From positions 61,442,001 to 61,506,000 of the forward strand of contig CM059430.1 in the NCBI GenBank assembly GCA_030390025.1: a DNA stretch of 64,000 nt, read 5' to 3'. How positions within the stretch are numbered: the first letter of the stretch is position 1; each line of letters starts with the position of its first letter. The notes beneath the pieces were generated by a model. That model made no database searches and was not told the DNA's origin. It was given only the letters and a program-made list of their open reading frames with translations. This document shows, one piece after another, positions 5,232 to 61,582 of the stretch. Source of the stretch: Squalus acanthias. Lineage: Eukaryota. Made by a program: the position numbers and the translations under genes.

Positions 5232-6562
5232 AGACCCCGACGGATAGACGTCGTTTAAGTATATAGACGTGTAGACTTGCTTGTACTTTCTTTATACGTT
5301 AATAAAAGCAACCAGTGATTTATTTCTGGTGTCCCAACCTATATCATTTGAATTAACCTGCTCAGTTGATCTAACAATTTCCAGTCAGGTTCTCTTTGGC
5401 TGGTGTCATCTGTACAGTTTGGGTAAATTTATAAAACTATAAAGGCTATATTAATAAAAAAGAATAGCACTTTCAAATGTTTCAGATCAGGAGAAAAGAT
5501 TGCACAACTCTGGGTTCTTTCAAATATGTGCCTGCTTAATGTTTTTTTTGAGTTAGTTTGAGGAAATGCAGGTCTTAGAGCTGACCATCCAGTGAATACA
5601 AACCGCCTGAGAGAAGTGGATTCAGTTGCCCCTGAGTCCTGGACGAGTCAAGAGCACGCAGACTATTTTCACTAGAGTTATGATACGAACTTGAAAACTT
5701 TTCAAATTATATCATAGTCTCTGTTCTGCTATAAAAACGCTGACTGTGTAAATTTATATAGCTGAAACAATACCAAAGTTTAAATAATTGAAATAATTTA
5801 ACATTGTTACACAATTCGGTACATGTGCTTCGTAATTCGAAGCTGTAGATTGATTTTAGATTTCCACTGTTAATGGTATAGCATAAATATTAATGTGCCA
5901 TAACCTCGAACATATCTAATATATTAATAGAAACGTACGAATCTTGCTTATTGTATTTTGTAAATTGTGTTCCTATAACCGTGAGGCATCTCAGCCCCCC
6001 CGCTGTCTAGAATGTCACGTATCATGGACAACAAGCTTTGATCTAGTTCCGCTTTGGATTCTATTTTCCGGTTGCCTCGCTCCTCAGTAATCGATTCCTC
6101 AATCCAGCCTCACTTCTCTATACGAAATTGTTCCCTTCTGTCTGAGTCTGTAAATAGAAACTCGCTTTCGGCATATCTCCACCAATAGAGACATTCAGAT
6201 ATGAATTATCTTGAAAAAGAGGGGAGAGGATGGAATAGAACGCATTGCTTGTACCGGAGATCACACTGGTTCTTGAAGAGCTTGTGCCATTTGGAACACA
6301 GCATCATATCCGCACACAGAGCGGCAACAATGGAAAATACCTGCAAAAGTAATCCCAATGAACTTTATGCACTGATCCAAAACCCACTCATTGACAGAAA
6401 CTGGCAGCTTGCCAACAATGAACACAAAACTCTCATGGTTTGGGGGAAAACTGGTTTGTGTATAATCTGATGTGATCTGTGAAACAATGACGTGTGCGTA
6501 TACACAACTTAAACTAGAGTACCCGTAACCGAGTGTGAAGAGTAGGACGGAAGTCTGTGCTT

Positions 6563-34086: not shown

Positions 34087-35872
34087 CTACTTGGTTCTTG
34101 TTTCTCTGTAGACGGCTTCTGTTACTCGTCTTTGGATTTTTGCCTGTAGCTCTGAATGCTCTGTGCTTCTTTCGTTATTTTTAGATATCCCCGTATTCCC
34201 GGAGACAGTCAAGTCTAGATTCACGTACATCGACTTGTGACACAGTTTGGAAATATTATTACTTGATTGTTTTATTGCTTTGTGGATTACTGACAAAACA
34301 TCCATCAGCTTGAGATGCAATGCACGCTCAAAGTCAGCACAAGTCGAAATAGTCCGGTTTCGCTTAAATGCTTACACCGCACGGATGCTCTGCGTCTGCT
34401 TCTCGGTCATACTTAAAAGTACACATTTCGTCTCCTCATCATTCTTAGGTCTTGGAGCTTGGCTTAGTCTGATCGAATTGAATGCTTTGTGCTGCTCCCT
34501 GCATGGGCTGTAATGAAAGCATTTTGTTATGTGGTTTATTCACTGTCTGCACCAGTTTACATAATTCTGGGCAAACATTGATCAGAATGACGGGGCTACA
34601 AATAAAGTGCAGAAACCATAGTTGATACATTTAAATAGGCGCGAAAGTCAAGGCCGATATCTAGTGCCCTCACTATAACTGATATTTCAACTGTCAATGT
34701 TCACGCTGCACATACAGTGTTATAACCGTGTTTAGATGAGCGACAACTTCAGAACATATTTGCATAATGTTATATTCCACCTACAAGATTTGAGGAACTA
34801 TTAAATAGTTATTCTCTAGTTATTAAAAGTACATTTTTAAGAAACGTAATTTAGATTTTGTACTTTTTAGCCATTAGCAGCAAGAATGCACCGGGTGCCA
34901 TATATTTTTTCTTAAGTGCGATTTGAATCGCTAAAGAGGGACAAGTGTTTTTACGAAATAGATTTAAAGTGTTCTGACATAATTATAATGAAACCTCTTC
35001 ACTGTAAAAAAAAGTTTTCACATTTGATTCCTCTGCCTGGTTGAAAGATGGATACATGTCAGTTACCTTCAGGTCCCGTTAGACTTTCTTGGGAATCAAT
35101 GGAATTTAATTAAGTAAATAATTGGAACAAAAGCAAACTACTGCGGATGCTGGAAATCCGAAATAAAAACTGAAAATGCTGAAAATACTCAGCAGGCCAG
35201 GCAGCATCTGTAGAGAGAGAAACAGAGTTAACGTTTCAGGTCGCTGACCCTCGAAGCGTTAACTCTGTTTCTCTCTCTACAGATGCTGCCTGACCTGCTG
35301 AGTATTTCCAGCATTTTCTGTTTTTTATTTAAGTAAATAATTGGAATGGTGACTCAGTTTTCATGCCCGGGATTTCAAAGACATTTATAGTGTCACTGTA
35401 AAACCTTGCATCATTTTCAATATCACATTTATCCGACACCATTTGGAATCCCATCCCCTGTAATGATCTGTAATCACATGCAGCCATTCCGAGCTTCACA
35501 CAAACTAGTTACAGATCGCAATGGACTGATACTAAAACTGACGACGTGAAAAAGGCAGATTTCAGATATCAACTACTGCAAAATGTACATTTCTATTATA
35601 AATAGTTGATATTCCGACCCATTTATAATATTATTCTGTGAGAATCACTGCACTTCAAAATCCCTAACTTAATGCTGCTTTCGGCAATAGACAATCGCAG
35701 AGCCACTCATTCCCTCTTCATTTTTGAAAAGAAACAACAGTAAAGGTAAAAACTTTGCTTCATTATTTCTTAAAGCGGTATCGCATCCCAGTGATGATCA
35801 TAATCACTAGAAATGCCGATCTAGAAAATGTATTCCCAGAAACCCTGACATACGAAAGCTTACCGCTGCAAT
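34087..35872 (-). pseudogene. Inverted pseudogene paralog of the ITIM receptor (TM and three cytoplasmic exons)
   Basis: TM-like 35872-35758 (DCSGKLSYVRVSGNTFSRSAFLVIMIITGMRYRFKK*); cyt1-like about 35095-35057 (ESLTGPE then GTAAC); cyt2-like 34498-34413 after CCCATGCAG|GGAGCAGC; last exon ...MYVNLDLTVSGNTGISKNNERSTEHSELQAKIQRRVTEAVYRETRTK*. Intron blocks also match 57000-57390. Splice sites are mutated or deleted. Confidence 0.88.
35128..35328. mobile_element. Penelope-derived foldback element with 18-bp TSD
   Basis: TTAAGTAAATAATTGGAA at 35110-35127 and 35329-35346; the interior is a long inverted repeat. Confidence 0.85.
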
Positions 35873-41759: not shown

Positions 41760-41897
41760 NNNNNNNNNNNNNNNNNNNNNNNNNNNNNNNNNNNNNNNNN
41801 NNNNNNNNNNNNNNNNNNNNNNNNNNNNNNNNNNNNNNNNNNNNNNNNNNNNNNNNNNNNNNNNNNNNNNNNNNNNNNNNNNNNNNNNNNNNNNNNN
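41760..41897. other. Assembly gap (138 N)
   Basis: Run of N. Confidence 1.
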
Positions 41898-46279: not shown

Positions 46280-46569
46280 TGCCGTTACTTATCAGGAAAC
46301 ACTTCGCTTGTTTTGGCAAATTCTGCACATGAAAATCAAATATTTTCCCTTACTCTTTGCTGTCCGTCACACATGTAGTCCAAGCAGTTGAATAAGCTCA
46401 GAATTTAGAAAATTCCACTTCACAAACGAAGCTAAATTTCTGAACCCGCAATTACAGGATGTCAAATGTCATTGCGACCGATCTCATTGAAAACTAACCG
46501 CAAACCATTCTTAACAGTTGCAAACTCGCAGTTACTGCAGAGAGTCATCAGTTGAGTCTGTTGCTCAGA
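46280..46569 (+). promoter_or_regulatory. Putative proximal promoter/5'UTR of the receptor gene
   Basis: Unique sequence directly upstream of the leader ATG; RUNX-type AACCGCA at 46496-46502 and ETS-type CAGGAAA at about 46293. These are short motifs and could be chance. Confidence 0.3.
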
Positions 46570-46624
46570 ATGTCGGCGAGTATCCTTTTCCTGTGCCTGA
46601 CTCTCCGGGGGATTATTTACATAG
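46570..46624 (+). CDS. IgSF receptor exon 1: signal peptide
   Basis: ATG at 46570, MSASILFLCLTLRGIIYI + G then donor GTACCT; 55 nt, phase 1, in frame with the V exon. Confidence 0.8.
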
Positions 46625-46793
46625 GTACCTCTTTATTCATTGTCCCAGCTACTTAAATTTATAAAATGCTTCCGAGGTAGTTTTCACATTAATTTAGTGA
46701 ACTGCCATTCCTCTATCTAGATTAGGTTTCACTCTTCCATCGCCATGACGTGTCTAATACAATTAACCTGTACTTGACTATATTTTTTGACAG

Positions 46794-47114
46794 CGGCGGA
46801 CCAGATTTCGTTCAGAGTGATTCAAGTGCCCAAACAAGCGACTGTATCCAGAGGGGAGAACATCACCTTATACTGCTTATTCCCCATCTCCCAGGACCAT
46901 TCCTGGGTAAGAGTGCATTGGTGGAAACAGGGTGATAATGAATACCTGCGCCCAGGCGCGGATAACAGAAAACGATTTGGTCTCAAAAGTAAGGCGAGCT
47001 GGTTCTTTCAGTTGCTGAGCGCGACTTTCCAAGACTCTGGAGTCTATCACTGTGCAGTGTTCCATCGGGGAATAATTCGAGGAAATGGAACCGGATCACA
47101 TGTAATTGTGCATG
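46794..47114 (+). CDS. IgSF receptor exon 2: germline VJ-type V domain (NKp30/NCR3- and SIRP-like)
   Basis: Acceptor TTTTTTGACAG, donor G|GTAAGT; open 321 nt; GENITLYC, VHWWK, DSGVYHC and J-like GNGTGSHVIV. Confidence 0.93.
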
Positions 47115-48346
47115 GTAAGTGTGAAACACAGGAGAGCGGGACAGTCGAAACTATATCGAACATATCAAACGGGGATGTTTTGTGATTGTTTTATTGCACC
47201 GCTTTTGGCCGTATAAACATGTCTATTGACACATTTCGCGATAAGTAAAGATGTATGTTCGCGTGCTCTGTGTAGAACTGCTAATTAGGCATTCAATATC
47301 ACAGGCAGAGTATTGCAAATTTATCAATATTAACCAATTAGACTATAACTGCAAAGACAATTTACACACCTGCTATCTGATAGCGGAAGTTCGGAACAAA
47401 TTCCAAGCATATTACTGACTGAAAATCCTTTGTATTAATGCGCCTCTCCCAACATATACACGGGTCTCAGCCCATTCCTGATGCTTTGTCTGCCCCCATC
47501 GCTGTCTTTGCGGTTTAACATTCCTGAAATTTATTCTCACATAATGTTAGCGTCAGGGATTAGAAAGCCACCGTGAAACTAGCTGTTGATCAACGGCTTC
47601 ACTCAACAAACTGGAGCTTGGAACACACAACGTTGGCACCTCATTAACTTCCAATAACTGAAGCAATACAGAGGAACTGTGTTACCGAACCCTCCTGACG
47701 TTCAACCGAATATAATGTCGTTCCCCAATTGTCATGTTTGCAGCGAACATAAAAACTGACTGTAAAAGCTTCTATAGAAATGTGAAGAGAAAAAGATTGG
47801 TGAAGTCAAGCGTAGGTCCCTTGCAGTCAGAATCAGGGGAATTCATAATGGGGAACAAAGAAATGGCAGACCAATTAAATACATACTTTGGTTCTCTCTT
47901 CACAAAGGAGGACACAAATAACCTCCCAGAGATGTCGGGGATCATAGGGTCTAATGAGAGGGAGGAATAGAATGAAATCAGTATTTGTAGGGAAATGGTG
48001 TTAGGGAAATTGACGGGATTGAAGGCCGATAAATCCCCACGGCCTGATAATCTACATCCGAGGGTACTTAAGGAAGTGGCCCTAGAAATTGTAGATGCAT
48101 TGCTGGTCATCTTCCAAAATTCTATAGACCCTGGAACAGTTCCCATGGATTGGAGGATAGCTAATGTAACCCCACTATTTAAAAAAGGTGGTAGAGAGAA
48201 AACGGGGAATTATAGACCGGTAAGTCTGACATCGGTAGTGGGGAAAATGCTAGAGTCCACTTGGAAAACAGTGACAGGATTGGACAAAGTCAACATGGAT
48301 TTACAAAAGATAAATCATGCCTGACTAATCTACTTTAATTTTTTGA

Positions 48347-48557
48347 TGTGGTGATGCCGGTGTTGGACTGGGGTGGACAAATGTGAGAAGTTGCACAACA
48401 CCAGGTTATAGTACAACAGCTTTATTTGAAATCACAAGCTTTCGGAGCGCTGCTCCTTTGTAAGATGAAGTCACCTGACGAAGGAGCAGCGCTCCGAAAG
48501 CTTGTGATTTCAAATAAAGCTGTTGGACTATAACCTGGTGTTGTGCGACTTCTCACA
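48347..48557. mobile_element. Foldback Penelope-type non-autonomous element (about 81-nt arms) with 12-bp TSD
   Basis: TTAATTTTTTGA at 48335-48346 and 48558-48569; arms 48380-48460 and 48479-48559 are reverse complements with 3 mismatches. Confidence 0.85.
48467..48511 (+). ncRNA. Minimal type-I hammerhead ribozyme motif
   Basis: GAAGTCAC-CTGACGA-A-GGAGC-AGC-GCTCC-GAAA-GC-TT-GTGATTTC: stem I 8 bp (one GU), conserved core, 5-bp stem II, loopless palindromic stem III (AGCT), putative CUU cleavage triplet. Confidence 0.7.
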
Positions 48558-50223
48558 TTAATTTTTTGAGGATGTAACTGGTAGAAAAGATAAGGGAGAA
48601 CCAGTGGATGTGGTGTATTTGGACTTTCAGAAGGCTTTTGATAATGTCCCGCATAAGAGATTAGTGTGCAAAGTTAAAGCACACAGGATTGGGGGTAAGA
48701 TACTGTCTTGGATAGAGAACTGCTTGGCAGACAGGAAGCAAAGAGTTGGACTAAACGGGTCTTTTTCAGAGTGGCAGGCAGTGACTAGTGGGGTACCGCA
48801 GGGATCGGTGCTAGGACCCCAGCTATTCACAATATATATAAATGATCTAGACGAGGGAACTAGATGTAATATCTCAAAGTTTGCAGATGACAAAAAGCTA
48901 GGTGGGCGTGTGTGCTGTGAGGAGGATGCAGAGAAACTCCAGTATGATTTGGACAGGTTGAGTGATTGGGCAGATGCATGGCAAATGCAGTATAATGTGG
49001 ATAAATGCGAGGTTATCCACTTCGGTGGCAAAAACAGGAAGACAGATTATTATCTGAATGGTAATAGATTGGGAAAAGGGGAAGTGCAACGAGACCTGGG
49101 TGTCCTTGTGCACCAGTTGCTGAAGGTAAGCATGCAGGTGCAGCAGGCGGTTAAGAAGGGAAATGGTATGTTGGCCTTCATAGCGAGAGGATTCGAGTAC
49201 AGGAGCAAGGATGTCTTGCTGCAGTTGTACAGGGCATTGATGAGACCACACCTTGAATATTGTGTGCAGTTTTGGTCACCTTCTCTGAGGAAAGGTGTTG
49301 TTGCCATGGAGAGAGTGCAGCGAAGATTCACCAGACTGATACCTGGGATGGCAGGGATGACGTATGAGGTGAGATTGGAACGATTAGGCTTATATTCGCT
49401 GGAGTTTAGAAGAATGAGGGGATCTCATTGAAACTTATAAAATTCTAACAGGACTAGACAGACTAGATGCAGGAAGGATGTTCCCAATGGCGGGGGAGCC
49501 CAGAACCAGGAGTCACAGTCTAAGGATAAGGGGTAAGCCATTTAGGACTGAGGAGGAATTTCTTCACCCAGAGAGTGGTGAACCTGTGGAATTCTCTACC
49601 ACACAAGGCAGTTGAGGCCAATTCATTAAATATATTCAAGAAGGAGTTAGATATATTTCTTAAGGCTAAAGGGATCAAGGGATATGGGGAGAAAGCAGGG
49701 ACAGGGTACTGAATTTGGATGATCAGCCATGATCGCATTACATGGCGGAACAGGCTCGAGGGTCCGAATGGCCTACTCCTGCTCCTATCTTCTATGTTTT
49801 GGCTGTGAAATCTGTCCGCTACCGACTAAGGCCATCAGTGTGCCACCCACAATGTGCAACTTACTGGTCACTGTCTATCTGTTCCTAACACGGAGGGACT
49901 CAGCGCTCCAACTTCCCCCAAGGTTTATTTACTTAATTCTTTGGACTATAAAAAGGAAACATTGATTAGCAAATCGTTGCGACTGGTGTGCTGAGTAACT
50001 CAAAGTCTTGGACTTGATAGCGCAGGTAAAATTGAACAGATGCGGGTGTCTATGAGAGATATGGATCAGGTGTGTGTAGATGATGAGCGTAACATTAAAA
50101 GGACAGGAGGCTGCGCTTTCTAATGGTGCTATTATAATAAAATGGACGGAACGTAAATCAGATTCGTATTTAATCTCCCAATGGTGCCCAGTTAGTCGAC
50201 TTTGTTCATTCTCCGTTCCGCAG

Positions 50224-51913
50224 CGTCCCCAACCCCACTGAAGATTTTCTCCACTGCACGGGATTAACCTGCTTCTCTCATTCTTCTGCGTTTTATCCGG
50301 AGAATTTCACCCTCAATTGGTATAAAAATGGCGTTGAAACTGCATTAGGAATAAATACCATGAAAGTGCAGAACACGGAGGGTCTGTATGAAGTTTTCAG
50401 CTCTTTGACTCAGACGCAGCCTGTCCCGTGTAGGGGTAGGTGTGGTAGGGTCAGCTTCACCTCTGACTCAGTGAGCGGTTCGAATCGCTCCCACACACCT
50501 GGTTCTAGACCTTGGACTTATTTGGGGGTTGTGATACAAAAGGTGCAGCAAACAACTGAGTTTGATGAAAGATCTTCGATCTTTATTCAAGAAAGTAAAA
50601 CACAACACAAACACTCTTAATACTCTAAAGGTGGGGAACACTTCGGTACACGCGAGGTAAATAACATTAGAAGAATACTTCACCCCTCCCAATCCCTCTT
50701 CACTAGCTAGGTTGGACTCTGGAGAACCAGGGATAATGCTCACCAAACGAATCCTTGACAGTTGAGAGTTAGGGTTTAGAGTCTTCTGAGTAAATGGTTT
50801 CATAAGGCCCTTGTTGCCGCGAGGTGTCCGATGGTCACTGAGGCGGTTGCTCTGGTCTCTTCTTGCGTGTCGGCCTACTTCTGGAGCTGTTGGCTTTCTT
50901 TGTTGAACTGCTTTCTGTTCAAACTGTCTTCTTCCGAGCTGTGGAACTGCCTTCTTGCAGAACTGTGGAAACTGCCTTCTGCCTGCTTGTTGAACTTGAA
51001 CTGTTTTACTGGAGAACTGGAGAGCTTCCTTCTTACTGAACTGTCTTCTTTAACTGCCCAACTTGCTTCTCCTGAACTCTGTAATTCCAGCACTGACTTC
51101 TGCTGAAAAACAGGCTTTCAAATTGAACTCCAAAACTGCAGAACAGCCTTCTGTTGAACAGGGACTGTTGTTACTGCTTTCTCGTACTTGTAACTGTTGA
51201 AAAACTGCTGAACTGCTTAATGGGCCTTCAATTATACTAAATGGAAGTGACCTTATCAAATACAAATCAAATCCTGGTCATTGTAAGACCTCGTTAACAG
51301 TAATGACTTTGCTAGCGTGTTAACTGGTTTTGTAAATGTGTGAAGTGGTTTCAGGATAGGTCCATCCTGTCGATCTGTTGTTTAATCGGAGTTTGAATTG
51401 TTCTCATGTTTTGGGTTTCTTGACTGGGCCTGAGACTTCGATCGAATATTTGCTTTATGCATGTCTTTAATGGGTTCTGTAATCGGTTTGATGGGACCTG
51501 TTGTTTTGGGTGGGAATGTCTCCTCCTAGGGTCTATTGTCAAAATGTTAATGCTTGCTGGGGCTTGAGTAAGGTCATCCCGATTCCCCAGACAATGCAAT
51601 TTAACTGCAATACCAAAAACTGCTTTTGCAGAGGTCGTACCCAACTTCCTTCACAGCCTTTTCTCCCTTTACAGGCCCAGACATGCTTTTAAAATGCCAA
51701 AACTTGGTTTTTGGTCTTAAATTCCTTATGTTAGGCCCAAATGCATTTTTATCACTCTGAGGTAGTTCCAAAGTCCTTTTTCCTTAGGTTTTGGGGATCC
51801 GCAAATTTTGGAAACCTTACACCCGAGCGACGCCAATTATACCTGTTTGGTTTCTCATGTCTAGCTCGAGACACCAGCTGTTGTCACCCATACTGTTTCG
51901 AAATCTAACCAAG
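50224..51913 (+). pseudogene. IgSF receptor exon 3: disabled C1-set domain (50224-50428 + 51826-51913)
   Basis: Acceptor TTCCGCAG; ASPTPLKIFSTARD*PASLILL, frameshift, AFYPENFTLNWYKNG...NTEGLYEVFSSL...QPVP [LTR] SDANYTCLVSHV*LETPAV...NQ then G|GTATGA. C1 motifs FYP, WYKNG and YxCxVxH; 293 nt without the insertion, not a multiple of 3. Confidence 0.92.
50429..51821 (-). mobile_element. Solo LTR (1393 bp) with 4-bp TSD
   Basis: Starts TGTAGGGGT and ends ACCTTACA; CCCG at 50425-50428 and 51822-51825; minus-strand AATAAA at 50582-50587 and TATA-like at about 51232-51237; no coding remnants. Confidence 0.88.
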
Positions 51914-52666
51914 GTATGAGGCCAAAAGACCAAAAAGGACAACTAGCTACTGTTAAATTCGTAGAGAGATATATCGGACAGTTTGTACATATTAATAATC
52001 ATGAAGATAGTCCAAGGAAATCTCATGGGAAATATCAACGAAAGCATTAAATTCATGTTTTAATGTATAATATAGTTGAATCTGATGTGTTGTGAAACCG
52101 GGTTATATCTCAGTTATATTCTGTCAAAACATTTTTGATTTCAAATTCCTTTATTTGATAAATACAATTATAAACAGAAGTTTAACTTTTCTATCTGATT
52201 ATATTTCCGCATCTGCTTATTACTAATTTATTTCAATGATAAGATTGCTTTATTCTTTGTCATTGCCTGCTCTCCTTGCACCAAGACTGTTACCAGGAGC
52301 TGCAGTCAGGTACTCGGGCTTCTCCCAATGCAGTTCCGGATCCTGATCCCCCTATCGGCTAATTCTACTGTAGAGATATGAAATTAACCCCCTAGCCAGC
52401 TTTTACCCCTCATTTGTCCATGCCACAACGGGTTTAATTGGAATCTGTCTCATAAATCTCATTTAAACTGTGCCCGCAAACTGGCGGCAGTACAGCCGGT
52501 TCAATATTGTGAACAACTCTTTGCCCTGCAAGACAATAATCAATGAACCATCGCACGTTGACATCCTTTACTATTCAGTGACATTCTTACTGTAATAAAC
52601 ACAGTTCAGGTAATTGAAAGAGGATTTTTAACAGACTGCTGCAATCCGGATTTTCGTGCGGGCAAC

Positions 52667-55600
52667 ATAAGAACATAAGAACATAAGAAATAGGAGCAGG
52701 AGTAGGCCAATCGGCCCCTCGAGCCTGCTCCGCCATTCAATAAGATCATGGCTGATCTGATCCTAACCACCAATCTACTATCTATCACAGAACCATCTCC
52801 TGCATCTAACAGAATTGCACACACGAAATAGGAGCAGAATCAGGCTACACAGTCCCTGGGCCCGCTCCACTACCCACAGGGCCATGACCGATCCGAACCT
52901 AGACTCATGTCCAAATTCCTGCCCGCTCCCCGTAACCCTTAATGCCCTTTACTTCTAGGAAACTGTCTATTTCTGTTTTAAATTTAATTAATGTTGTAGC
53001 TTCTACAGCTTTTTGTGGCAGCATATTCCATGGACCTACCACCCTCTGAGTGAAGTAGTTCCTCCTCATCTCAGTTTTGAAAGAGCAGCCCCTTATTCTA
53101 AGACTATGTCCCCTAGTTCTCGTCTCACCCGTCATCGGGAACATCCTCCCCGCATCCACCCGATCCAACCCCTTCACAATCTTATATGTTTCAATAAGAT
53201 CGCCTCTCATTCTTCTGAACTCCAATGAGTAGAGTCCCAATCTACCCAACCTCTCCTCATATGACCACCCCCTCATCCCCGGGATTAACCGAGTGAACCT
53301 TTTTTGCACTGCCTCGAGAGCAAGGATGTCTTTCCTTAAGTAAGGACACCAAAACTGTATGCAGTATTCCAGGTGCGGTCTCACCAATACCTTGTACAAC
53401 TGAAGCAATACCTCCCTATTTTTATATTCTATCCCCCTAGCAATGAAAGCCAACATTCCATTTGCCTTCTTAATCACTTGCTGCACCTGCATACTAACCT
53501 TTTGAGTTTCGTGCACCAGGACCCCCAGATCCCTTTGCACTTCAGTACTCTCCAGTTTCTTGCCATTAAGATAATAAATTGCTCTAGGATTTTTCCTGCC
53601 AAAGTGCATCACCTCACACTTTCCAGTGTTGTATTCCATCTGCCAAATCTCTGCCCACTTACTTAGCCTGTCTATGTCCCCTTGCAGGTTTTTTATGTCC
53701 TCCTCACTCACTACTTTCCCTCCCATCTTTGTATCATCTGCAAATTTTGATATGTTACACTTGGTCCCTTCCTCCAAATCGTTAATATAGATTGTGAAGA
53801 GTTGGGGACCCAGCACTGACCCCTGTGGAACACCACTAGTTACTGATTGCCAGTCTGAGAATGAACCATTTATCCCAACTCTTTGCTTTCTGTTAGATAG
53901 CCAATCCTCTATCCATGCCAGAATATTACCCCCAATCCCGTGATTTTTTACCTTAAGCAATAATCTTTTGTGTGGCACCTTGTCAAATGCCTTTTGGAAG
54001 TCTAAATACACTACGTCCACTGGTTCCCCTTTATCCACTCTATATGTTACTTCCTCAAAGAACTCCAGCAAATTTGTCAAACATGACTTCCCCTTCGTAA
54101 AACCATGCTGACTTTGTCCTATTAAATTATGATTATCCAAATGTCCTGTTACTGTTTCCTTAATAATGGACTCCAAAATTTTACCTACCACAGATGTTAG
54201 GCTAACCGGTCTATAGTTACCAGCCTTCTGTCTACTGCCCTTTTTAAATAAGGGTGTTACATTAGCAGTTTTCCAGTCTGCCGGGACCTTAGCGGAATCC
54301 AGGGAGTTTTGAAAAATTATTACCAATGCATCTACAATCCCTACCGCCACTTCCTTCAAGACTCTAGGATGTAAGCCATCAGGTCCAGGTGATTTATCCG
54401 CCTTGAGTCCCATTATTTTACCGAGTACCACTTCCTTAGTGATTTTGATCGTGTTTAGCTCCTCTCCCCCTATAGCCCCCTGTTTGTCCAGTGTTGGGAT
54501 ATTCTTAGTGTCCTCTACTGTAAAGACTGATACAAAATATTCATTCAGTGTTTTTGCCATCTCCATATTTCCCACCATTAATTTCCCGGTCTCATCCTCT
54601 AAGGGACCAACATTTACTTTAGCCACCCTTTTTCTTTTTATATAACTATAAAAACTCTTACTATCTGTTTTTATATTTTTTGCTAATTTACTTTCATAAT
54701 CTATCTTCCCTTTCTTAATCAATCTTTTTGTTATTTTTTGCTGCCTTTTAAAGTTTTCCCAATCCTCTGTCCTCCCACTAGATTTCGCTACCTTATATGC
54801 CCTTGTTTTTAGTCGAATACTATCCTTAATTTCTTTACTTAGCCACGGATGACTGTCCTTTCTTTTACACCCTTTTCTTTTCAGTGGAATATATTTTTTT
54901 GGAAGTTGTAAAATAACTCCTTGAATGTACACCACTGATCATGTGTCGTCTTACCCTTTAATCTATTTTCCCAATCCACTCTACTCAATTCCGCTCGCAT
55001 ACCTTCATAGTCTCCTTTATTCAAGCTTAGCACGCTTGTTTGAGATCCAACCTTCTCACCCTCTAATTGAATATGGAATTCAACCATGTTATGGTCACTC
55101 ATTCCAAGGGGATCCTTTACTAGGACATTTTTAATTAATCCTGTCTCGTTACACAGGACCAGATCTAAGGTTGCTTGCCCCCTGGTCGGTTCAGTTACAT
55201 ACTGCTCAAGAAACCCATCCCTAATACACTCAATGAACTCATCCTCAAGGCAGCCCTGCCCCATTTGATTTGTCCAATTAATATGATAGTTAAAATCCCC
55301 CATAATTATAGATGTTCCCTTATTACATGCCTCAACTATTTCCTGATTGATACTCCGTCCAATAGAGTTGCAACTGTTCGGAGGCCTATAGACTACGCCC
55401 ACTAATGTTTTTTTCCCCTTATTATTCCTTATCTCCACCCAAACTGTTTCATTATCATGATTTTTTGACCCAATATCATTACTCTGTATTACAGTGATTC
55501 CTTCCTTTATTAACATAGCCACCCCACCTCCCCTTCCTTCCTGCCTGTCCTTCCTGATCGTTAAATAACCTGGTATGTTTAATTCCCAGGCATTGTCCCA
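52667..55600 (-). mobile_element. Young 5'-truncated CR1 LINE in intron 3, ORF2 nearly intact
   Basis: 676-aa open RT ORF 52905-54935 and 213-aa APE ORF 54881-55522 joined by one frameshift at a homopolymer; (AACATAAG)n tail; GGCAAC at 52661-52666 and 55601-55606. Confidence 0.95.
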
Positions 55601-55986
55601 GGCAACGAAGAAACGCTTGTGACAAAATTGCCTCCACTTTCCTCAAACTATATGTTAAGAAATAAGAAAGGTCAAGAACAAGAACAAGTCTTTTGGTCAT
55701 GGGAAATTGAAGTCTCTCGTGTTCTAACTCTCCTAAAACAGTGCTGTGAGATCCCTAAACCGGTAGTGCGATACGCAGATAGATCCAGAATGTCAGATCC
55801 ATTCGACGAAGAAGTTACTTCAAAGATGCTATCTAAATGAAATAACATTTTGCATTTAATCTTTCTTATTGCCGTTCTATACCGCGGAGTTACTGAAAGA
55901 AACATCATCGTTTAACCAATAAACTATCTTGAGGCCTATTTTTAACCAACACCCGCCATAACTTAATGTTCCTATTAATCTTACAG

Positions 55987-56100
55987 ATAGCGTCGATAAG
56001 TCACTTTACTTCTGGGCTTCTGGGTGTGCGGTGGGTGGATTGGCGTTTCTGGTGCTAATGATCTTCATTGGGACGCGGTGCCGACTGCTGAAGAATGAAG
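55987..56100 (+). CDS. IgSF receptor exon 4: transmembrane (uncharged)
   Basis: Acceptor TAATCTTACAG, donor G|GTAAGA; phase 1-1; DSVDKSLYFWASGCAVGGLAFLVLMIFIGTRCRLLKNE. Confidence 0.9.
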
Positions 56101-56447
56101 GTAAGATCAACTGTAAGCCCTTTATTTTATTACAAAACCTCCCGTTTAGTGACAGACTCCGGGTAACATTGGGGAAGGGGAACTCGATTAGGACTTAAAG
56201 TTGAAAACCGTGTTATCTGTTTCAGGAAGCGCCGATTGTTCCAAATGCATTTTAAAATGCAGAAATGCTCACAGAATCGTAATAAAAATTTAAATAAATA
56301 TCTGTATATTTGCAAGAAAAATGCCCCCTTTGCAGCATAATAAATGACATGTACCCTGAAACACAATCACTTTCCAACCCATTCTGTTGTGGATGCGCAG
56401 CGAGTTTGAGTGAAAGAGTGCGAGGCACCGGCCGTTGACTGTTTGCA

Positions 56448-56595
56448 AACATAAGAACATAATAAACAGGAGCAGGAGTAGGCCATACTGCCCTCGAGCC
56501 TGCTCCGCCATGCAATAAGACCTTGGCTGATCTTCTACGTCAACGCCACTTTCCCGCCCTATCCCCATATCCCTTGATGCCCTTAGTGTCAAAAA
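56448..56595 (-). mobile_element. CR1 3' tail fragment in intron 4
   Basis: AACATAAGAACATAA...AGGAGCAGGAGTAGGCC...GAGCCTGCTCCGCC. Confidence 0.75.
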
Positions 56596-56802
56596 AGATA
56601 CCTTAGTTTCCGACAAATATCCAACAAATCCACCATTGTTGATCGCTACAAGGGCTGGAATTTCAAACACTGTCGCCACAATCCGGAATTGAAAACCATG
56701 TTCGGCTTTGTTCTGACTCTAGAAATGTCTTTGCAATCACTGACATGGAAACTGAGTAAATGTTGCAATCTTTCAATATCATTAAATTTCATTCATTTAC
56801 AG

Positions 56803-56846
56803 GTAAAGAAGAATGTGTAACGGGACCGAACCGCCGTGAAGGGCTG
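56803..56846 (+). CDS. IgSF receptor exon 5: first cytoplasmic exon
   Basis: Acceptor TTCATTTACAG, donor GTAGGT; 44 nt, phase 1 to 0, GKEECVTGPNRREGL; homologous piece in the pseudogene at about 35060-35095. Confidence 0.8.
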
Positions 56847-57391
56847 GTAGGTTCATTCATTCCTCCCTGCAGACGGTTGAAATGGCAAGAAAGATTGCTA
56901 TAATGGAAAGATTATATCATAGTCATGTCAGGACAATTTAAGTCTATTTACTGAAATTATGTATCCGGTCTTAGTGAGTGATTCAAATCGTGGTTAGAAA
57001 TGTACTTGGCACCCGGTGCGTTGCTGGTAAAAATTGTTAAATGGCAAACAAGAAAACTGCTTCTTTCGTTGAAAATGCACCTAGGTAATAACTGTCTATA
57101 GATTCATCTATTCTTTGGATTTGAAAAAAAAACTTTACGTTCTAAAGCTACCGCTCATTTAAACATGTCTGTAACACTGTGTTGTAGTGTGAACAATGAC
57201 ATGTTTAAATATTAGTTATAGTGATCACAGTTCCTTAATATACGCACCTATGTAAATATATCTGAATTAGGGTTTGTGCACTTGATGTCTAGCCCAGTTT
57301 TATCTGTTCAATGTTTGATCAGCGGCATGTAAACTGGTGAAGGCAATGAACTAGCCACATAACCAAACGATTTTCTTTCTGACCCATGCAG

Positions 57392-57493
57392 GGAGCAGCG
57401 GCTGAGACCGTGCATTATGCTGCATTAGATTTGAGCAGAGTCAGGAAAACTCCAAGATCTAAACGTGAAGAGCAGAGAACCGTGTCCGCTCAG
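57392..57493 (+). CDS. IgSF receptor exon 6: cytoplasmic, ITIM (VHYAAL)
   Basis: Acceptor TTTCTGACCCATGCAG, donor CAG|GTAGGT; phase 0-0; GAAAETVHYAALDLSRVRKTPRSKREEQRTVSAQ. Confidence 0.88.
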
Positions 57494-57700
57494 GTAGGTC
57501 TGAGGAAGAGATCAGAGAAACGTAGATCACCGGTGTTACATCAACATTCATGCGATAGCGGGGGGCATATGTTTGTGCTGACTTTGACCGTGTGTTGTAT
57601 CTAAGGCTATTTTTGTGTCCTTCTGATGACTGCTTTGAGCAGCAGTCCACAAAACCTACGAAAAGACCAATTAGCAAATTTCCAAACATTGGCTTCACAG

Positions 57701-57871
57701 ACCGAACAAGGGACAGCCGGTGACAAGATGACGTACGCGACTCTAGCATTGACTGGCTCAGAGAAAACGGGGAAATGCAAAAATAACGAAAGGCAAGAAT
57801 ATGGCCAGCTGCGGACAAAAAAACAAAGAGGAGTAACAGAGGCTGTCTACACAGAAGTAAGAACGAATTAG
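57701..57871 (+). CDS. IgSF receptor exon 7: terminal cytoplasmic exon with three tyrosine motifs
   Basis: Acceptor GGCTTCACAG; TEQGTAGDKMTYATLALTGSEKTGKCKNNERQEYGQLRTKKQRGVTEAVYTEVRTN*; homologous to ORF 34087-34320(-). Confidence 0.88.
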   Translation, partial: TEQGTAGDKMTYATLALTGSEKTGKCKNNERQEYGQLRTKKQRGVTEAVYTEVRTN

Positions 57872-58164
57872 CAATAGAAATTCAGATGAGGAATTCACAT
57901 TTTTGATGTGTACTGATCGCATTTCGCTGCCATATCACGCGTATGTATACCGTGCGATACCATCTCTCCGAGAGGTAACACATTCCATTGATATATCAGA
58001 AAATACAGTCTATAGTTATTACTTACTGTTTTCTTAAAAGTAACTTTCCTGACATACTTTGATGTTAAATCGGTATTAGTTAACTGATGACAAATCTATG
58101 CTCATTCGATTAGAATGATACGCTAATATCCTTGCTGTACCTAATTATCATTATACATTAATTC

Positions 58165-58170
58165 AATAAA
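58165..58170 (+). terminator. Candidate polyadenylation signal of the receptor gene
   Basis: AATAAA about 295 nt after the stop codon, with a GT-rich tract at about 58240-58260. Confidence 0.5.
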
Positions 58171-59109
58171 AATAGATTATATACGATCTCTTACAAGTCA
58201 ACGATTAGTGCTCATTTTTTGCGAGTAAAACTGCAAAACCTGTGTGTTGGTTTATGTGTGGCGTCACTGCACTCTGACTTCCAGTCCAGGTGAAGTTCCT
58301 GATGTGAAACGGGTGAAGCTCCAATCTATCAATTCGTCCATCAAGCTACTGAAAGTGGCGACCAGTTGCTTTATATCTTCCGAACATCTATCTACCCATG
58401 TGGCCAAGTAGAATCATAGAATCTTACAGCACAGAAGGAGACCATGCTGCCCATTGTGCCCGTGCTGGCACTTTGAAAGATCTATCCAATTCGTCCAACT
58501 CTCGCGCTCTTTCCCTAAAGCCCTGCAATTTTCTTCTTTTCACGTCTATATCTACTTGCGTTTTGAAATTTCCCATGTATTCTGTTTCCAAGACTCATTA
58601 TCTTCTGGTGTCACTATCGCTACCGATGGGAATGTGTAAACGCTTCGCCTTAAGGCGTTTGTCCCTCTTTTATTCATTCAATTTTCATATATTAATCTAA
58701 ATGTATTACTAAGTACATTTTCTGCCTTTTTCTTTTATATATCCACGCACAAATTTCAGTCCAGTTAAATTGGTTAAATCTCTGAAACGAACTGCAATTT
58801 CTTCATGTCCTACAATATTGTAACATTGGTCACGTGGGCTCCCAAATTGTAGGTTCTGCATATTGTCTAAAATGTCAAGAGAGTTCGGCCAATAAAGCAC
58901 CTTTTATTCAATTTCTCCATAATTGTAACCATTTTGTGAGGAATGTTGCTCATTCAAGTTGTTCCTATCACACTGTTTGACAACACAGAACTGGAGTTTG
59001 GAGGTGATGAAGGAGCAGATTTGCAAAGAATTTCTGATGTGTCGTCTAGCCGACCCGTTCCAATCACATCGGGACATTGAGCAGAGGCAATCAATCCTCA
59101 TTCGTGATG

Positions 59110-59459
59110 TCACAGGAGAGGCACTTCCAGATGGAATTCCTGCTCACAGACATCATGCAACCGGCAGATTAGTATGATAATAAAGGTGACTGGAAGACAG
59201 TAATAAGTGGAGAGATATTTTCCGTTACAACATTGAAGGAATATCAGGCAGTTCTGAAGCGTCGAGATGTTTGCATTCCCCTTAAATAATACACTATCTA
59301 TGATTATGCACAATAAGATTGAAAAGACAATGCGTAGACATATGCGCAGAAGCAAATATAACGACAAATATGCACGGCAAATGTATCGTGGCTGTGGATA
59401 CTTATTGACAAAGTATCCAACTTCGAATGCCAATGGGAGCACATCTTGTCTCTCTCCGT
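59110..59459 (-). pseudogene. Putative connecting-peptide/TM exon with intramembrane Arg residues (activating-type receptor)
   Basis: Acceptor TCTGCAAATCTACCTAG, phase-1 open frame DGERQDVLPLAF...YICRAYLSLYLLLRICLRIVFSILLCIIIDSVLFK. The 3' boundary is uncertain (ORF stop used). Confidence 0.5.
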
Positions 59460-59788
59460 CTAGGTAGATTTGCAGAATAGTATTTTTCTGGTGGCTTAAT
59501 GTAAAGGTAACCCTTGCTGCACGTAAATAGTTTCGGTTTATATTAAAATTAATACATAATCAAAGTAAAAATATGAATAGGAATGGATAATCAACTCAAC
59601 GGAATCAAACACGATGACGTTTTTCTTATTTGCCTGATCTCTATGTTACCCGGTAAACCCGTTTAACTTTCTCACCACCCCTCCCCCGATCAGAAATCAG
59701 TTTAATTCGCCGATTCTCTATTAATCAATTGCCGCACATTATCGGTACAGGTCTGAGTCAGAAAAATTAGGCTTTCAGTTATATTCAG

Positions 59789-61330
59789 AACATAGAAACA
59801 TACAAAAATTGGAGCAGGAGTAGGCTATTCGGGCCTTCGAGCCTGCTCCGCCATTCAATATGCTCATGGCTGATCCTCTATCTCAATCCCATATTCCCGC
59901 TCTCTCCCTATACCCCTTGACGCCTTTTGTGTCTAGAAATCTATCTATTTCCTTCTTAAATATATTCAGTGACTTGGCCTCCACAGCCTTCTGTGGTAGA
60001 GAATTCCACAGTTGCACCACCCTCTGAGTGAAGAAATTTCTCCTCACCCCGTATCCTGAGACTGTGACCCCTCGTTCTCGACACCTCAGCCAGGGGAAAC
60101 ATCCTCCCTGCATCCAGTCTGTCTAGCCCTGTCAGAATTTTATACTTTTCAATGAGATCCCCTCTCATTCTCCTAAACTCAAGTGAATATAGGCCTAGTC
60201 GACCCAATCTGTCCTCATACGACAGTCCTGTCATCACAGGAATCAGTCTGGTGAACCTTCGCTGCACTCCCTCTGTGGCAAGTATATCCTTTTTTAGGTA
60301 AGGAGACCAAAACTGCACACAGTACTCCAGGTGTGGTGTCACCAAGTCCCTGTATAACTGTAGTAAGACATCCTTGCTCCTGTACTCAAATCCTCTTGCA
60401 ATGAAGGCCAACATACCATTTACCTTCCTAACTGCTTGCTGGACCTGCATGCTTGCTTTCAGTGACTGGTGTACAAGGACACCCAGGTCCCTTTGTACAT
60501 CAACATTTCCCCATCTATCACCATTTAAAAAATACTCTGCCTTTCTATTTTTCCTACCAAAGTCAATAACTTCACATTTATCCACGATATACTGCATCTG
60601 CAATGTATTTGCCCACTCACTCAACTTCTCTAAATCGCCTTGAAGCCTCTTTGCATCCTTCACACAACTCACAGTCCCACCAAGTTTCGTGTCGTCAGCA
60701 AACTTGGAAATATTACATTTGGTTACTTCATCCAAATCATTGATATACACTGTGAATAGCCCGGGCCCAACACTGACCCCTGAAGTACTCCACTAGGTAC
60801 TGTCTGCCACCCTGGAAAAGACCCATTTATTCCTACTCTCTGTTTCCTGTCTGTTAACCAATTTTCAATCCATGCCAATATATTACCCCCAATCCCAGGT
60901 ATTTTAATTTTGCACATTAACCTCTTATGTGGGACTTTATCAAAGGCCTTCTGAAAATTCAAATACACCACATCCACTGGTTCTCCCTTATCTATTCTAC
61001 CAGTTACATCCTCAAAAACTCCAGTAGGTTTGTCAAACACGATTTCCCTTTCATAAATCCATGTTGACTTTGTCTAATCCCGTTGATATTTTCTAAGTGT
61101 CCTGTTATCACATCCTTTATAATAGTCTCTAGCATTTTCCCTTCTACTGATGTTAGACTAACTAGCCTGTAGTTCCCTGTTTTCTCTCTCTCTCCTTTTT
61201 TAAATAGTGTAGTTACATTTGCCACCCTCCAATCTGCCGGAACTGTTCCATAAGCTATCTAGAATTTTGGAAGATGACATCAAATGCATCCATTATTTCC
61301 ATGGCTACATCTTTTAGCACTCTGGGATGG
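59789..61330 (-). mobile_element. 5'-truncated CR1 LINE
   Basis: Minus-strand RT ORFs 59956-61225; AACATAGAAACATA tail at about 59789. Confidence 0.92.
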
Positions 61331-61582
61331 TGAACATTGTTGCTGCAGCTTGGAATCGCGACTTCTGATTCCACATAAGCAACCGACTTTCCCAATGCGA
61401 TTGATTTGCCACATTAATCAGTCGACGCGAAAACGGGATTGCAGCTAACTCTATGGGATGTATCTTTTTATATTGACAACACTCGATATAAGCACTGTTC
61501 ACATTAAAACCACTATCAATAAGACATGCTACTGCCTTACATGATGAAGACTGTATTTGCAGTCGCGGATCATGTGTTTTCA
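61331..61582 (-). pseudogene. Degenerate C1-like Ig constant-domain exon, cut by a CR1 insertion
   Basis: Acceptor TTGTGTTTCGCAG, phase 1: VKTHDPRLQIQSSSCKAVACLIDSGFNVNSAYIEC...LINVANQSHWES, then CLCGIR in a shifted frame; partial fit to the C1 pattern P..xCLxxGF..W.S..C. Confidence 0.45.

What the first reader, a model, noticed from the sequence alone, without database searches (positions are those of the whole stretch)
46570..57871. VJ-C1-TM-ITIM receptor apparently losing its C1 domain: only that exon is dead
Seen: the C1 exon has four lesions in about 293 nt (TAA 50265-50267, a frameshifting deletion near 50288 that removes the first Cys, a solo LTR, TAG 51862-51864). The other six exons (807 nt) have no stop or frameshift and keep GT-AG sites. 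V ends in phase 1 and TM starts in phase 1, so skipping C1 gives an in-frame 268-aa L-V-TM-tail protein. Known: NKp30 is a single VJ-type V plus TM, while SIRPs and antigen-receptor chains carry VJ plus C1. Inference: the gene is alive as a one-domain inhibitory receptor, showing a VJ-C1 to VJ-only transition by exon death rather than whole-gene pseudogenisation.
Basis: partly seen in the sequence, partly recalled or inferred. Interest (0 to 1): 0.88.

Follow-up and report, generated by a model that had tools for sequence, protein, structure and literature searches.

The report
Shark immune receptor with dead middle exon
A shark immune-receptor gene has one wrecked exon (its constant-type domain) while the other six are intact, so it may still make a shorter inhibitory receptor by skipping that exon, but no RNA data could be found to show that it does.

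Summary
The gene is real: leader, VJ-type V, C1, TM and three tail exons. The six non-C1 exons total 807 nt, are open, have GT-AG sites, and V and TM are both phase 1.

The C1 exon (50224-51913) is dead, but the lesion list needs correcting.
- The frameshift is a roughly 19-nt deletion near 50253-50262, not near 50288.
- TAA 50265-67 lies out of the ancestral frame, so it is not an independent hit.
- The canonical Cys is substituted (Ser, 50276-78), not deleted.
- The 1393-bp TG..CA insert with a CCCG duplication and the TAG at 51862-64 are real.

The gene belongs to a large family of non-rearranging V-C1-TM-ITIM genes in sharks, rays and chimaeras, which NCBI labels SIRP-alpha-like or tapasin-related-like. 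Relatives already have annotated C1-less V-TM forms, including an exact C1-skip isoform in Heterodontus. KIR pseudoexon 3 is a known precedent.

I found no RNA run, and amino-acid rates do not discriminate. I put a live V-only receptor at about 0.5 and a young pseudogene at about 0.38. First-stage notes of this scan flag the same family elsewhere in this genome. Interest is moderate: a new member of a known kind.

The parts
46570..46624 (+). Leader exon (ATG; MSASILFLCLTLRGIIYI; ends in phase 1)
   Evidence: 15 of 17 residues are identical to the leaders of Heptranchias P0162 and P0163.
46794..47114 (+). VJ-type V exon, 321 nt, phase 1 to phase 1, ending in the J-like motif GNGTGSHVIVH
   Evidence: Pfam V-set 1.2e-8. 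80.6% identical to P0182. AlphaFold model pLDDT 91.1. The invariant residues Q10, P12, C27, W42, D80, Y84 and C86 are all kept.
50224..50428 (+). C1 pseudoexon, 5' part (205 nt), with an intact acceptor (...ccgttccgcag)
   Evidence: Family C1 profile positions 2-12 match in the entry frame and positions 19-76 in a second frame. Pfam C1-set 4.8e-5.
50253..50262 (+). Approximate breakpoint of a frameshifting deletion of about 19 nt (six profile positions missing)
   Evidence: The exon is 293 nt, which is 2 mod 3, so a 3n+1 loss is needed for a phase 1-1 exon.
50265..50267 (+). TAA in the entry frame only. It is out of the ancestral frame (GGA TTA ACC), so it is a consequence of the deletion and not a separate lesion.
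50276..50278 (+). TCT (Ser) at the column that is the canonical first Cys in 15 of 15 relatives. The B strand reads CFSHSS where the family has LVCETA.
50429..51821 (+). 1393-bp repeat insertion with TG..CA ends and no long ORF apart from a low-complexity one; solo-LTR-like
   Evidence: Contig depth in 4 of 4 runs covers the bins of the insert but not the flanks (table 2).
50425..50428 (+). Target-site duplication CCCG, left copy
51822..51825 (+). Target-site duplication CCCG, right copy
51826..51913 (+). C1 pseudoexon, 3' part (88 nt; SDANYTCLVSHV*LETPAVVTHTVSKSNQ), donor AAG|GTATGA
51862..51864 (+). In-frame TAG where relatives have S or T (HVSL or HVTL)
55987..56100 (+). Stalk and transmembrane exon, 114 nt, phase 1 to phase 1; no charged residue in the membrane span
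   Evidence: Family TM profile E 5e-23. 72% identical to P0182.
56803..56846 (+). Cytoplasmic exon 1 (44 nt)
   Evidence: aligned to relatives.
57392..57493 (+). Cytoplasmic exon 2 (102 nt), carrying the one canonical ITIM, VHYAAL (57410-57427). The family motif TVYAQ reads TVSAQ here.
57701..57871 (+). Cytoplasmic exon 3 with the stop (TAG 57869-71). Contains MTYATL (family LTYATL), QEYGQL and AVYTEV.
58165..58170 (+). AATAAA, 294 nt after the stop; a possible polyadenylation signal
   Evidence: pattern match only.

Best explanation
This locus belongs to a multigene family of non-rearranging VJ-C1-TM-ITIM receptors found in sharks, rays and chimaeras. NCBI labels its members SIRP-alpha-like, SIRP-beta-like or tapasin-related-like. 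In this family the C1 domain sits on a phase 1-1 cassette exon, and gene models of intact relatives already skip that exon to give V-TM-ITIM isoforms.

In this copy the cassette has been destroyed. It carries a frameshifting deletion of about 19 nt, it has lost the canonical Cys, a 1.4-kb repeat splits the exon, and there is an in-frame TAG. Leader, V, TM and the three tail exons remain intact.

The most likely reading is that the only productive mRNA joins 47114 to 55987. That mRNA would encode a 268-residue single-V inhibitory receptor with a short stalk and one canonical ITIM. Facultative C1 skipping would thus have become obligate.

What is shown: the anatomy, the lesions, family membership and the C1-less relatives. 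What is inferred: that this copy is transcribed, spliced in that way and still under selection.
For: - Six exons of 807 nt are open, have canonical splice sites and have compatible phases.
- The three hard lesions all fall in C1, which is 27% of the coding length (0.019 if lesions were uniform).
- No second C1 exon lies in the V-TM intron.
- The V domain keeps all 7 invariant columns of a 36-sequence alignment and gives a confident model (pLDDT 91.1).
- Changes unique to this gene against its 6 nearest relatives: leader 0 of 13, V 2 of 71, TM 0 of 32, C1 8 of 92.
- V-TM proteins are annotated in Heterodontus, Scyliorhinus, Callorhinchus, Narcine and Mobula.
- P0073 differs from P0074 only by the exact C1 exon and an alternative N-terminal leader. 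Both are isoforms of one Heterodontus gene (XP_067905922 to XP_067905925).
- On the V tree the V-TM forms are scattered (7 changes for 8 rows), and this gene sits among V-C1 genes. C1 loss therefore recurs in the family.
- KIR lineage III pseudoexon 3 is a documented case of the same kind (PMC3504360, passage read).
Against: - There is no transcript evidence of any kind.
- Three-taxon counts show that C1 is not accelerated on this lineage (11-13 unique changes against 10-13 in P0182). V also has as many unique changes (12-13) as the intact outgroups. The C1 death is therefore recent, and intact neighbouring exons are expected even in a fresh pseudogene.
- This gene changes 3 of 17 family-invariant V positions, all conservatively (F25L, E47D, L103V), where 15 intact relatives change 0-2.
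- Two tail motifs are weakened: TVYAQ reads TVSAQ, and LTYATL reads MTYATL.
- The lesions may not be independent. Five of the 8 unique C1 changes are one cluster, and a conversion tract from a dead paralogue could deliver several lesions at once.
- Donor-like sites at 50435, 50439, 50630 and 50656 could pair with the intact C1 acceptor and produce stop-containing transcripts (rough matrix recalled from memory).
- The same window holds decayed family relics.
Confidence: 0.5

Rival explanations
1. The whole gene is a young pseudogene. It died recently, for instance when the repeat landed in the C1 exon or when a conversion tract from a dead paralogue arrived. The other exons have simply not yet been hit. 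This would be normal turnover in a birth-and-death immune gene cluster.
For: - C1 shows no excess of lineage-specific amino-acid change apart from one cluster, so little time has passed since it died.
- Three lesions falling in any single exon by chance has probability 0.050, and two lesions 0.20. The family has many loci per genome, so some would show this pattern.
- Relics of the family lie in the same window. A V with stops is at 6024-6273 on the minus strand. A TM at 35766-35852 and a last exon at 34090-34290, also on the minus strand, have no detectable V or C1.
- The gene changes 3 of 17 invariant V positions and has weakened two Tyr motifs.
- No RNA was found.
Against: - All three hard lesions are in C1, with none in the other 807 nt or at their 10 splice sites.
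- The V changes are conservative, and the rate of V change equals that of intact relatives.
- Skipping C1 is an annotated option in this family, so a hit in C1 need not kill the gene.
Confidence: 0.38
2. The C1 lesions are not fixed or not real. The assembly may show a null or variant haplotype (the insertion polymorphic), or small assembly errors may have created the frameshift and the TAG. In that case the species would still have an ordinary V-C1-TM gene at this locus.
For: No read of this species could be laid on the exons: the V-exon bins had zero depth and the leader and C1-start bins only traces. None of the lesions has therefore been checked against raw data.
Against: - A 1393-bp insert with a clean 4-bp duplication is not an assembly slip.
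- The B strand carries six consecutive replacements, including the Cys, in addition to the deletion and the TAG. That is too much for random consensus error.
Confidence: 0.07
3. The gene is alive, but the C1 remnant is included in a regulated way. The intact C1 acceptor would pair with donor-like sites at the start of the insert, giving a stop-containing exon that lowers output through mRNA decay. The V-TM form would then be a minor product.
For: The C1 acceptor has the most pyrimidine-rich tract of the gene (0.80). Donor-like sites lie at 50435, 50439, 50630 and 50656, with scores of 6.7-8.6 against 3.6-10.8 for the five real donors scored correctly, four of them 8.1-10.8 (matrix recalled, rough).
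Against: This is a sequence-motif argument only, with no transcript data. Splitting an exon with 1.4 kb of repeat usually weakens recognition of the exon (general knowledge, not tested here).
Confidence: 0.05

Closest known systems
Non-rearranging V-C1-TM-ITIM genes of sharks, rays and chimaeras, labelled by NCBI as 'tyrosine-protein phosphatase non-receptor type substrate 1-like', 'signal-regulatory protein beta-1-like' or 'tapasin-related protein-like' (nearest: Heptranchias perlo XP_067853772, P0182)
   Same: Same exon plan, the same J-like end of V, the same C1 motifs (AFYPENFTL.WYKNG, YTC.VSH), the same TM, and the same tail motifs and end. V is 80.6% identical, C1 64-73% and TM 72%.
   Different: In this copy the C1 exon is destroyed and one Tyr motif is lost. 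No published description of the family was found in my searches. The shark NCR3 paper, which may cover it, is not held in the library.
Annotated C1-less isoforms and genes of the same family (Heterodontus XP_067905925/P0073, Callorhinchus LOC103185896/P0014, Narcine P0008, Scyliorhinus P0135, Mobula P0049)
   Same: V joined directly to the stalk and TM exon at the same phase-1 junction (..IVH|D/G..), with the same short stalk and an ITIM tail.
   Different: At least the Heterodontus gene still has a working C1 exon, so skipping is optional there. Here skipping would be the only productive option. Those proteins are gene models, and I could not check their RNA support.
KIR lineage III genes with pseudoexon 3 (human KIR2DL1-3 and KIR2DS)
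   Same: An exon that encodes an Ig-like domain stays in the gene but is left out of the mRNA, so a receptor with one domain fewer is made. This is taken as evidence of descent from a longer form (PMC3504360, passage read).
   Different: It is an unrelated family (C2/I-type domains, primates), and there the lost domain is the membrane-distal D0. In KIR the skipping and the function are shown experimentally; here they are not.
Mammalian SIRP-alpha
   Same: A V domain followed by a C1-set domain, a single-pass TM and a Tyr-rich inhibitory tail with xTYAxL-type motifs (motifs recalled from memory). The homologue P0162 matches SIRP-alpha 2wng at 3.4e-14, and SIRP-alpha V appears among the fold neighbours.
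   Different: SIRP-alpha has three ectodomains (V-C1-C1; recalled). Antibody chains and UrIg2 score as well or better. Orthology and CD47 binding were not tested.
NKp30 (NCR3)
   Different: NKp30 is an activating receptor with a charged TM residue (recalled). This gene has an uncharged TM and an ITIM. No NKp30 chain was among the best 60 PDB sequence matches of the V exon or among the listed fold matches.

Membership tests
V-C1-TM-ITIM family of sharks, rays and chimaeras ('SIRP-alpha-like / tapasin-related-like') | V-set domain on one exon, ending in a J-like G-x-G-T-x-L/V-x-V motif | tested here: met
   Pfam V-set 1.2e-8. GNGTGSHVIVH aligns to the family motif GNGTGS.L.V.
V-C1-TM-ITIM family of sharks, rays and chimaeras ('SIRP-alpha-like / tapasin-related-like') | C1-set exon between V and TM | tested here: met
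   It is present as a broken exon. The family C1 profile matches at 1.9e-21, split over frames and pieces. Pfam C1-set 4.8e-5.
V-C1-TM-ITIM family of sharks, rays and chimaeras ('SIRP-alpha-like / tapasin-related-like') | Uncharged TM and a Tyr-motif tail homologous to the family | tested here: met
   TM profile 5e-23. The tail aligns through to the last residues of P0162 and P0182. One canonical ITIM is present.
V-C1-TM-ITIM family of sharks, rays and chimaeras ('SIRP-alpha-like / tapasin-related-like') | Closest relatives are family members | tested here: met
   199 hits at E <= 1e-3. The best single-V hits are from sharks, rays and chimaeras. On the V tree the gene sits in a clade with P0001, P0002 and P0161-P0163 (support 91/84).
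Live receptor gene with an Ig-domain pseudoexon (KIR pseudoexon-3 type) | Recognisable domain exon retained in the intron, and disabled or non-incorporated | tested here: met
Live receptor gene with an Ig-domain pseudoexon (KIR pseudoexon-3 type) | All other exons and splice sites intact, with phases that allow skipping | tested here: met
Live receptor gene with an Ig-domain pseudoexon (KIR pseudoexon-3 type) | mRNA made that lacks the pseudoexon | not testable with these tools
   No RNA run holds the V exon. Depth is zero in the V-exon bins and only traces in the leader and C1-start bins. The species is absent from the protein collection.
Live receptor gene with an Ig-domain pseudoexon (KIR pseudoexon-3 type) | Purifying selection on the remaining exons after the exon died | tested here: inconclusive
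   Only amino-acid rate counts were possible. V, TM and tail are no faster than in intact relatives, but C1 is not faster either.
Whole-gene pseudogene | Disabling lesions outside the C1 exon | tested here: not met
   There is no stop, frameshift or lost splice site in 807 nt. This does not exclude a very young pseudogene.
Mammalian SIRP family | V-C1-C1 ectodomain and orthology to SIRPA | tested here: not met
   Family members have a single C1. PDB matches to SIRP-alpha (3.4e-14) are no better than those to UrIg2 or antibody chains. Orthology was not tested.
NKp30 / NCR3 | Single V plus a TM with a charged residue for adaptor pairing (feature recalled) | tested here: not met
   The TM span LYFWASGCAVGGLAFLVLMIFIG has no charged residue and the tail carries an ITIM. 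NKp30 is not among the listed PDB matches.
Solo LTR | TG..CA termini, a short target-site duplication, many copies | tested here: met
   TG..CA ends, a CCCG duplication and 1393 bp. Multi-copy depth is confined to the insert in 4 of 4 runs.
Solo LTR | Matches the LTRs of a full-length element with internal genes | not testable with these tools
   There is no other copy in the window, and no genome-wide search of this species is available.

The most novel reading that the evidence does not exclude
This locus catches a non-rearranging VJ-C1 receptor in the act of becoming a VJ-only receptor. In this family the C1 cassette exon is optionally skipped. Here it has decayed into a pseudoexon, so the V-TM isoform would be the only product. 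The V tree shows C1-less forms arising repeatedly, so this would be a general and recurrent route from antigen-receptor-like VJ-C1 chains to NKp30-like single-V receptors. It would also offer a natural experiment on what the C1 domain contributes.
Probability: 0.45. Interest if true: 0.55.

Novelty: new member of a known kind. Interest (0 to 1): 0.4.

Why it matters
If the gene is alive, it gives a dated, sequence-level example of how an immune receptor sheds an Ig domain. An optionally skipped cassette exon is lost while the gene keeps working. The family involved (germline-joined VJ plus C1) is discussed as a relative of antigen-receptor precursors. It would parallel KIR pseudoexon 3 in a lineage about 450 million years removed (divergence figure recalled), and it would suggest one route by which single-V receptors such as NKp30 could arise.

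If the gene is dead, it is ordinary birth-and-death turnover.

Either way, the corrected lesion map and the finding that C1-less isoforms are already annotated across sharks, rays and a chimaera are useful for anyone annotating this family.

Tried and rejected
**Steps that led nowhere**
1. RNA evidence. The look-up of sequencing runs on 46570-47114 returned no RNA holder; the best share was 0.04 of 51 words. Read laying on 46570-52500 with all 4 runs at 80% likeness gave depth only over the intronic LINE and the insert. The V-exon bins had zero depth and the leader and C1-start bins only traces. The splice junction could not be tested.
3. Closer relatives or the species' own proteins. Searches with P0001 and P0162 found nothing closer than P0182 at 80% in V. 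The V exon alone found nothing in its length range.
4. Relative-rate test with P0182 as sister. It first seemed to show a fast V on this lineage (13 against 3). The full three-way counts and the identity matrix show instead that P0182 is unusually slow and that this gene's V equals the outgroups. I rejected it as evidence of decay.
5. Leave-one-out test on conserved columns. Numbers are small: V 3 of 17, C1 1 of 12. This is suggestive only.
6. An alternative acceptor at 50244 would put the 5' part of C1 in frame. It would leave only about 9 residues before the B strand, and the insert and the TAG would remain, so I rejected it as a rescue (reasoned).
7. Another C1 exon in the intron: none found.
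8. Literature. The Kinlein 2021 NCR3 paper, the Flajnik 2012 B7/NKp30 paper and the UrIg 2023 paper are not held. The search for 'PRARP' returned unrelated papers. Supplementary files were not consulted.
9. Fold search of the V model gave only generic V-domain neighbours.

Full report
**What is there**

Reading 46400-58400 and translating each proposed exon in its phase confirms a seven-exon gene on the + strand.

| Exon | Coordinates | Length | Notes |
|---|---|---|---|
| Leader | 46570-46624 | 55 nt | starts at ATG |
| V | 46794-47114 | 321 nt | phase 1-1 |
| C1 | 50224-51913 | 293 nt of exon sequence | in two pieces |
| Stalk/TM | 55987-56100 | 114 nt | phase 1-1 |
| Tail 1 | 56803-56846 | 44 nt | |
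| Tail 2 | 57392-57493 | 102 nt | |
| Tail 3 | 57701-57871 | 171 nt | includes the stop |

- The six non-C1 exons sum to 807 nt, contain no stop or frameshift, and have AG/GT flanks.
- Both the last base of V and the last base of C1 are G. Either one completes a GAT (Asp) codon with the first two bases of the TM exon. Skipping C1 therefore keeps the frame.
- I did not build, search or fold the joined model. The figure of 268 residues is arithmetic.
- Pfam finds V-set in the V exon (1.2e-8) and C1-set in the largest open C1 piece (4.8e-5).
- An AATAAA lies 294 nt past the stop.

**The C1 lesions, re-read against relatives**

I aligned the pieces to family proteins and scanned the six-frame ORFs of the window with a family C1 profile. 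This changes the lesion list.

- **Frameshift.** The entry frame matches the family start of C1 (SPTPLKIFS against PPTPLKIFS or APTPLKIVS) up to about 50258, covering profile positions 2-12. The match then continues in another frame from 50258 (positions 19-76). Six positions are missing. The exon is 293 nt, which is 2 mod 3, and a phase 1-1 exon must be a multiple of 3. The simplest reading is one deletion of about 19 nt near 50253-50262.
- **TAA.** The TAA at 50265-67 lies after that breakpoint. In the ancestral frame it reads GGA TTA ACC. It is a by-product of the shift, not a second hit.
- **Cys.** The column that is Cys in 15 of 15 relatives is Ser here (TCT, 50276-78), within a stretch where the family's LVCETA reads CFSHSS.
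- **Insert.** It runs 50429-51821 (1393 bp), starts TG and ends CA. It is flanked by CCCG on both sides, and removing it restores ..QPVPSDANYTC.. in frame. It has no other copy in the window. Contigs from all four runs laid covered the bins of the insert and the intronic LINE at high summed depth, while the bins on either side of the insert had zero or trace depth. It is a dispersed repeat. 'Solo LTR' fits but is not proven.
- **TAG.** The TAG at 51862-64 is in frame where relatives have Ser or Thr.
- **Tally.** The hard lesions are three (deletion, insert, TAG), plus the loss of the disulfide Cys. No other C1-like exon lies between V and TM.

**What family it is**

- A full HMMER scan with the V exon found 199 proteins at E <= 1e-3, of which 85 were at E <= 1e-10.
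- The best single-V hits come from sharks, rays and the elephant fish. NCBI calls them 'tyrosine-protein phosphatase non-receptor type substrate 1-like', 'signal-regulatory protein beta-1-like', 'tapasin-related protein-like' or 'uncharacterized'.
- They share one plan: leader, V ending in GNGTGS.L.V, C1 with AFYPENFTL.WYKNG and YTC.VSH, an uncharged TM, and a tail with several Tyr motifs.
- The nearest protein is Heptranchias perlo XP_067853772 (P0182, 370 aa). Identities are 87 of 108 in V, 35 of 48 and 21 of 33 in the two C1 pieces, and 31 of 43 in TM.
- Nothing closer exists in the collections searched. The V exon alone finds nothing in its length range. The species itself is therefore not represented.
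- By sequence against the PDB, the homologue P0162 matches UrIg2 (3.6e-15), antibody chains and SIRP-alpha (3.4e-14) about equally.
- The V exon models confidently (pLDDT 91.1), with generic V-domain neighbours: shark VNAR, NCAM d1, CD79b, SIRP-alpha V, and Fab and TCR V domains.
- I therefore file it in this V-C1-TM-ITIM family and not as a SIRP or NKp30 orthologue.
- First-stage notes of this scan report an intact paralogue about 26 kb beyond the window's end and further members on other pieces of the genome. I could not check them.

**Precedent for the proposed product**

- I classified the 181 proteins fetched by then with profiles of the family's V, C1 and TM parts. This gave 41 V-C1-TM, 38 V-C1 and 7 V-TM rows. 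P0049, whose TM the profile missed, makes 8 rows from 6 genes.
- The C1-less genes come from five species: Heterodontus (2 genes), Scyliorhinus, Callorhinchus, Narcine and Mobula.
- Heterodontus P0073 (isoform X4) is identical to P0074 (isoform X2) apart from an alternative N-terminal leader and the absence of exactly the C1 exon. Its junction ..ELIVH|GDGDG.. corresponds to ..HVIVH|DSVDK.. here. The four isoforms have consecutive accessions.
- A Callorhinchus V-TM protein shares an identical V with a V-C1 model.
- On a V-domain tree of 92 rows, the V-TM label needs 7 changes for 8 rows. This gene sits in a clade of V-C1 genes (support 91/84).
- C1-less products are therefore a recurrent and partly splice-derived feature of the family. 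The caveat is that these are computed gene models, and I could not see their RNA support.
- Outside the family, KIR lineage III genes keep an Ig-domain 'pseudoexon 3' that is not incorporated into mRNA (PMC3504360, passage read).

**Alive or dead?**

In favour of a live gene:
- All three hard lesions fall in the 27% of coding length that is C1. The probability is 0.019 if lesions were uniform, or 0.050 for all three in any one exon.
- Against the six nearest relatives, changes unique to this gene number 0 of 13 (leader), 2 of 71 (V), 0 of 32 (TM) and 8 of 92 (C1).
- All 7 invariant V columns of a 36-sequence alignment are kept.

Against a live gene:
- Five of the eight unique C1 changes are the single CFSHSS cluster.
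- In three-taxon counts with P0182 and P0162, P0163 or P0161, C1 shows 11-13 changes unique to this gene against 10-13 unique to P0182. That is no acceleration.
- In V the counts are 12-13 unique to this gene, 2-3 unique to P0182 and 12-13 unique to the outgroup. P0182 is simply slow, and this V evolves like the intact outgroups.
- The C1 death is therefore recent on this timescale, and rates cannot separate the hypotheses.
- This gene changes 3 of 17 family-invariant V positions (F25L, E47D, L103V, all conservative), where the 15 relatives change 0-2.
- The family's TVYAQ reads TVSAQ, and its second ITIM LTYATL reads MTYATL. Only VHYAAL fits the ITIM pattern.
- The window holds dead relatives. 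A V with stops is at 6024-6273 on the minus strand. A TM at 35766-35852 and a last exon at 34090-34290, also on the minus strand, have no detectable V or C1.
- The C1 acceptor is intact and strong. Donor-like sites at the start of the insert (50435, 50439, 50630, 50656) could yield stop-containing transcripts (matrix recalled, rough).

No RNA test was possible:
- No RNA holder was found for the V exon.
- The V-exon bins had zero depth and the leader and C1-start bins only traces.

**Verdict**

It is not demonstrated.
- I put a live V-only inhibitory receptor at about 0.5 and a young whole-gene pseudogene at about 0.38. A haplotype or assembly artefact gets 0.07, and a regulated stop-containing exon gets 0.05.
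- Loss of an Ig-domain exon in a working receptor gene is a known kind of event (KIR), and C1-less forms of this family are already in public annotation. The finding is therefore at most a new member of a known kind, of moderate interest.
- The shark NCR3 paper and the UrIg paper, which may describe this family, were not held. Supplementary files were not seen.

Noticed in passing
window 6024-6273 (minus strand): A decayed V exon of the same family. Profile pieces lie in three frames, with stops at the positions of conserved residues (..D*GIDY*GAR..GTRSKLVVH).
   Followed up: partly
window 34090-34290 and 35766-35852 (minus strand): A paralogue's last tail exon (..NNERSTEHSELQAKIQRRVTEAVYRETRTK, about 57% identical to P0162) and a TM-like exon (AFLVIMIITGMRYRFKK). 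No V or C1 exon is detectable upstream. An N stretch at 41760-41897 lies in between.
   Followed up: partly
window 47740-49800, with 48340-48560: The V-C1 intron holds a LINE reverse-transcriptase fragment. It is interrupted by a palindromic element of about 220 bp. The bin of that element had by far the highest summed contig depth in all four runs.
   Followed up: no
window 52640-55600: A long repeat in the C1-TM intron. Its left end is the reverse complement of the LINE 3' end seen at 49750-49800. It was not characterised.
   Followed up: no
proteins P0049 and P0064 (Mobula birostris): The two models share an identical TM and tail but have different V domains, and only P0064 has C1. This suggests alternative V exons feeding one set of 3' exons.
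   Followed up: no
protein P0182 (Heptranchias perlo): Its V domain is about 80% identical to this gene, P0162, P0163 and P0161, while those are about 70% identical to each other. It is an unusually slow, near-central V sequence.
   Followed up: partly
window 59110-61582 (minus strand): An earlier first-stage note reports a TCR-constant-like exon and an Arg-bearing TM here. My family profiles found nothing there at E below 1.
   Followed up: no
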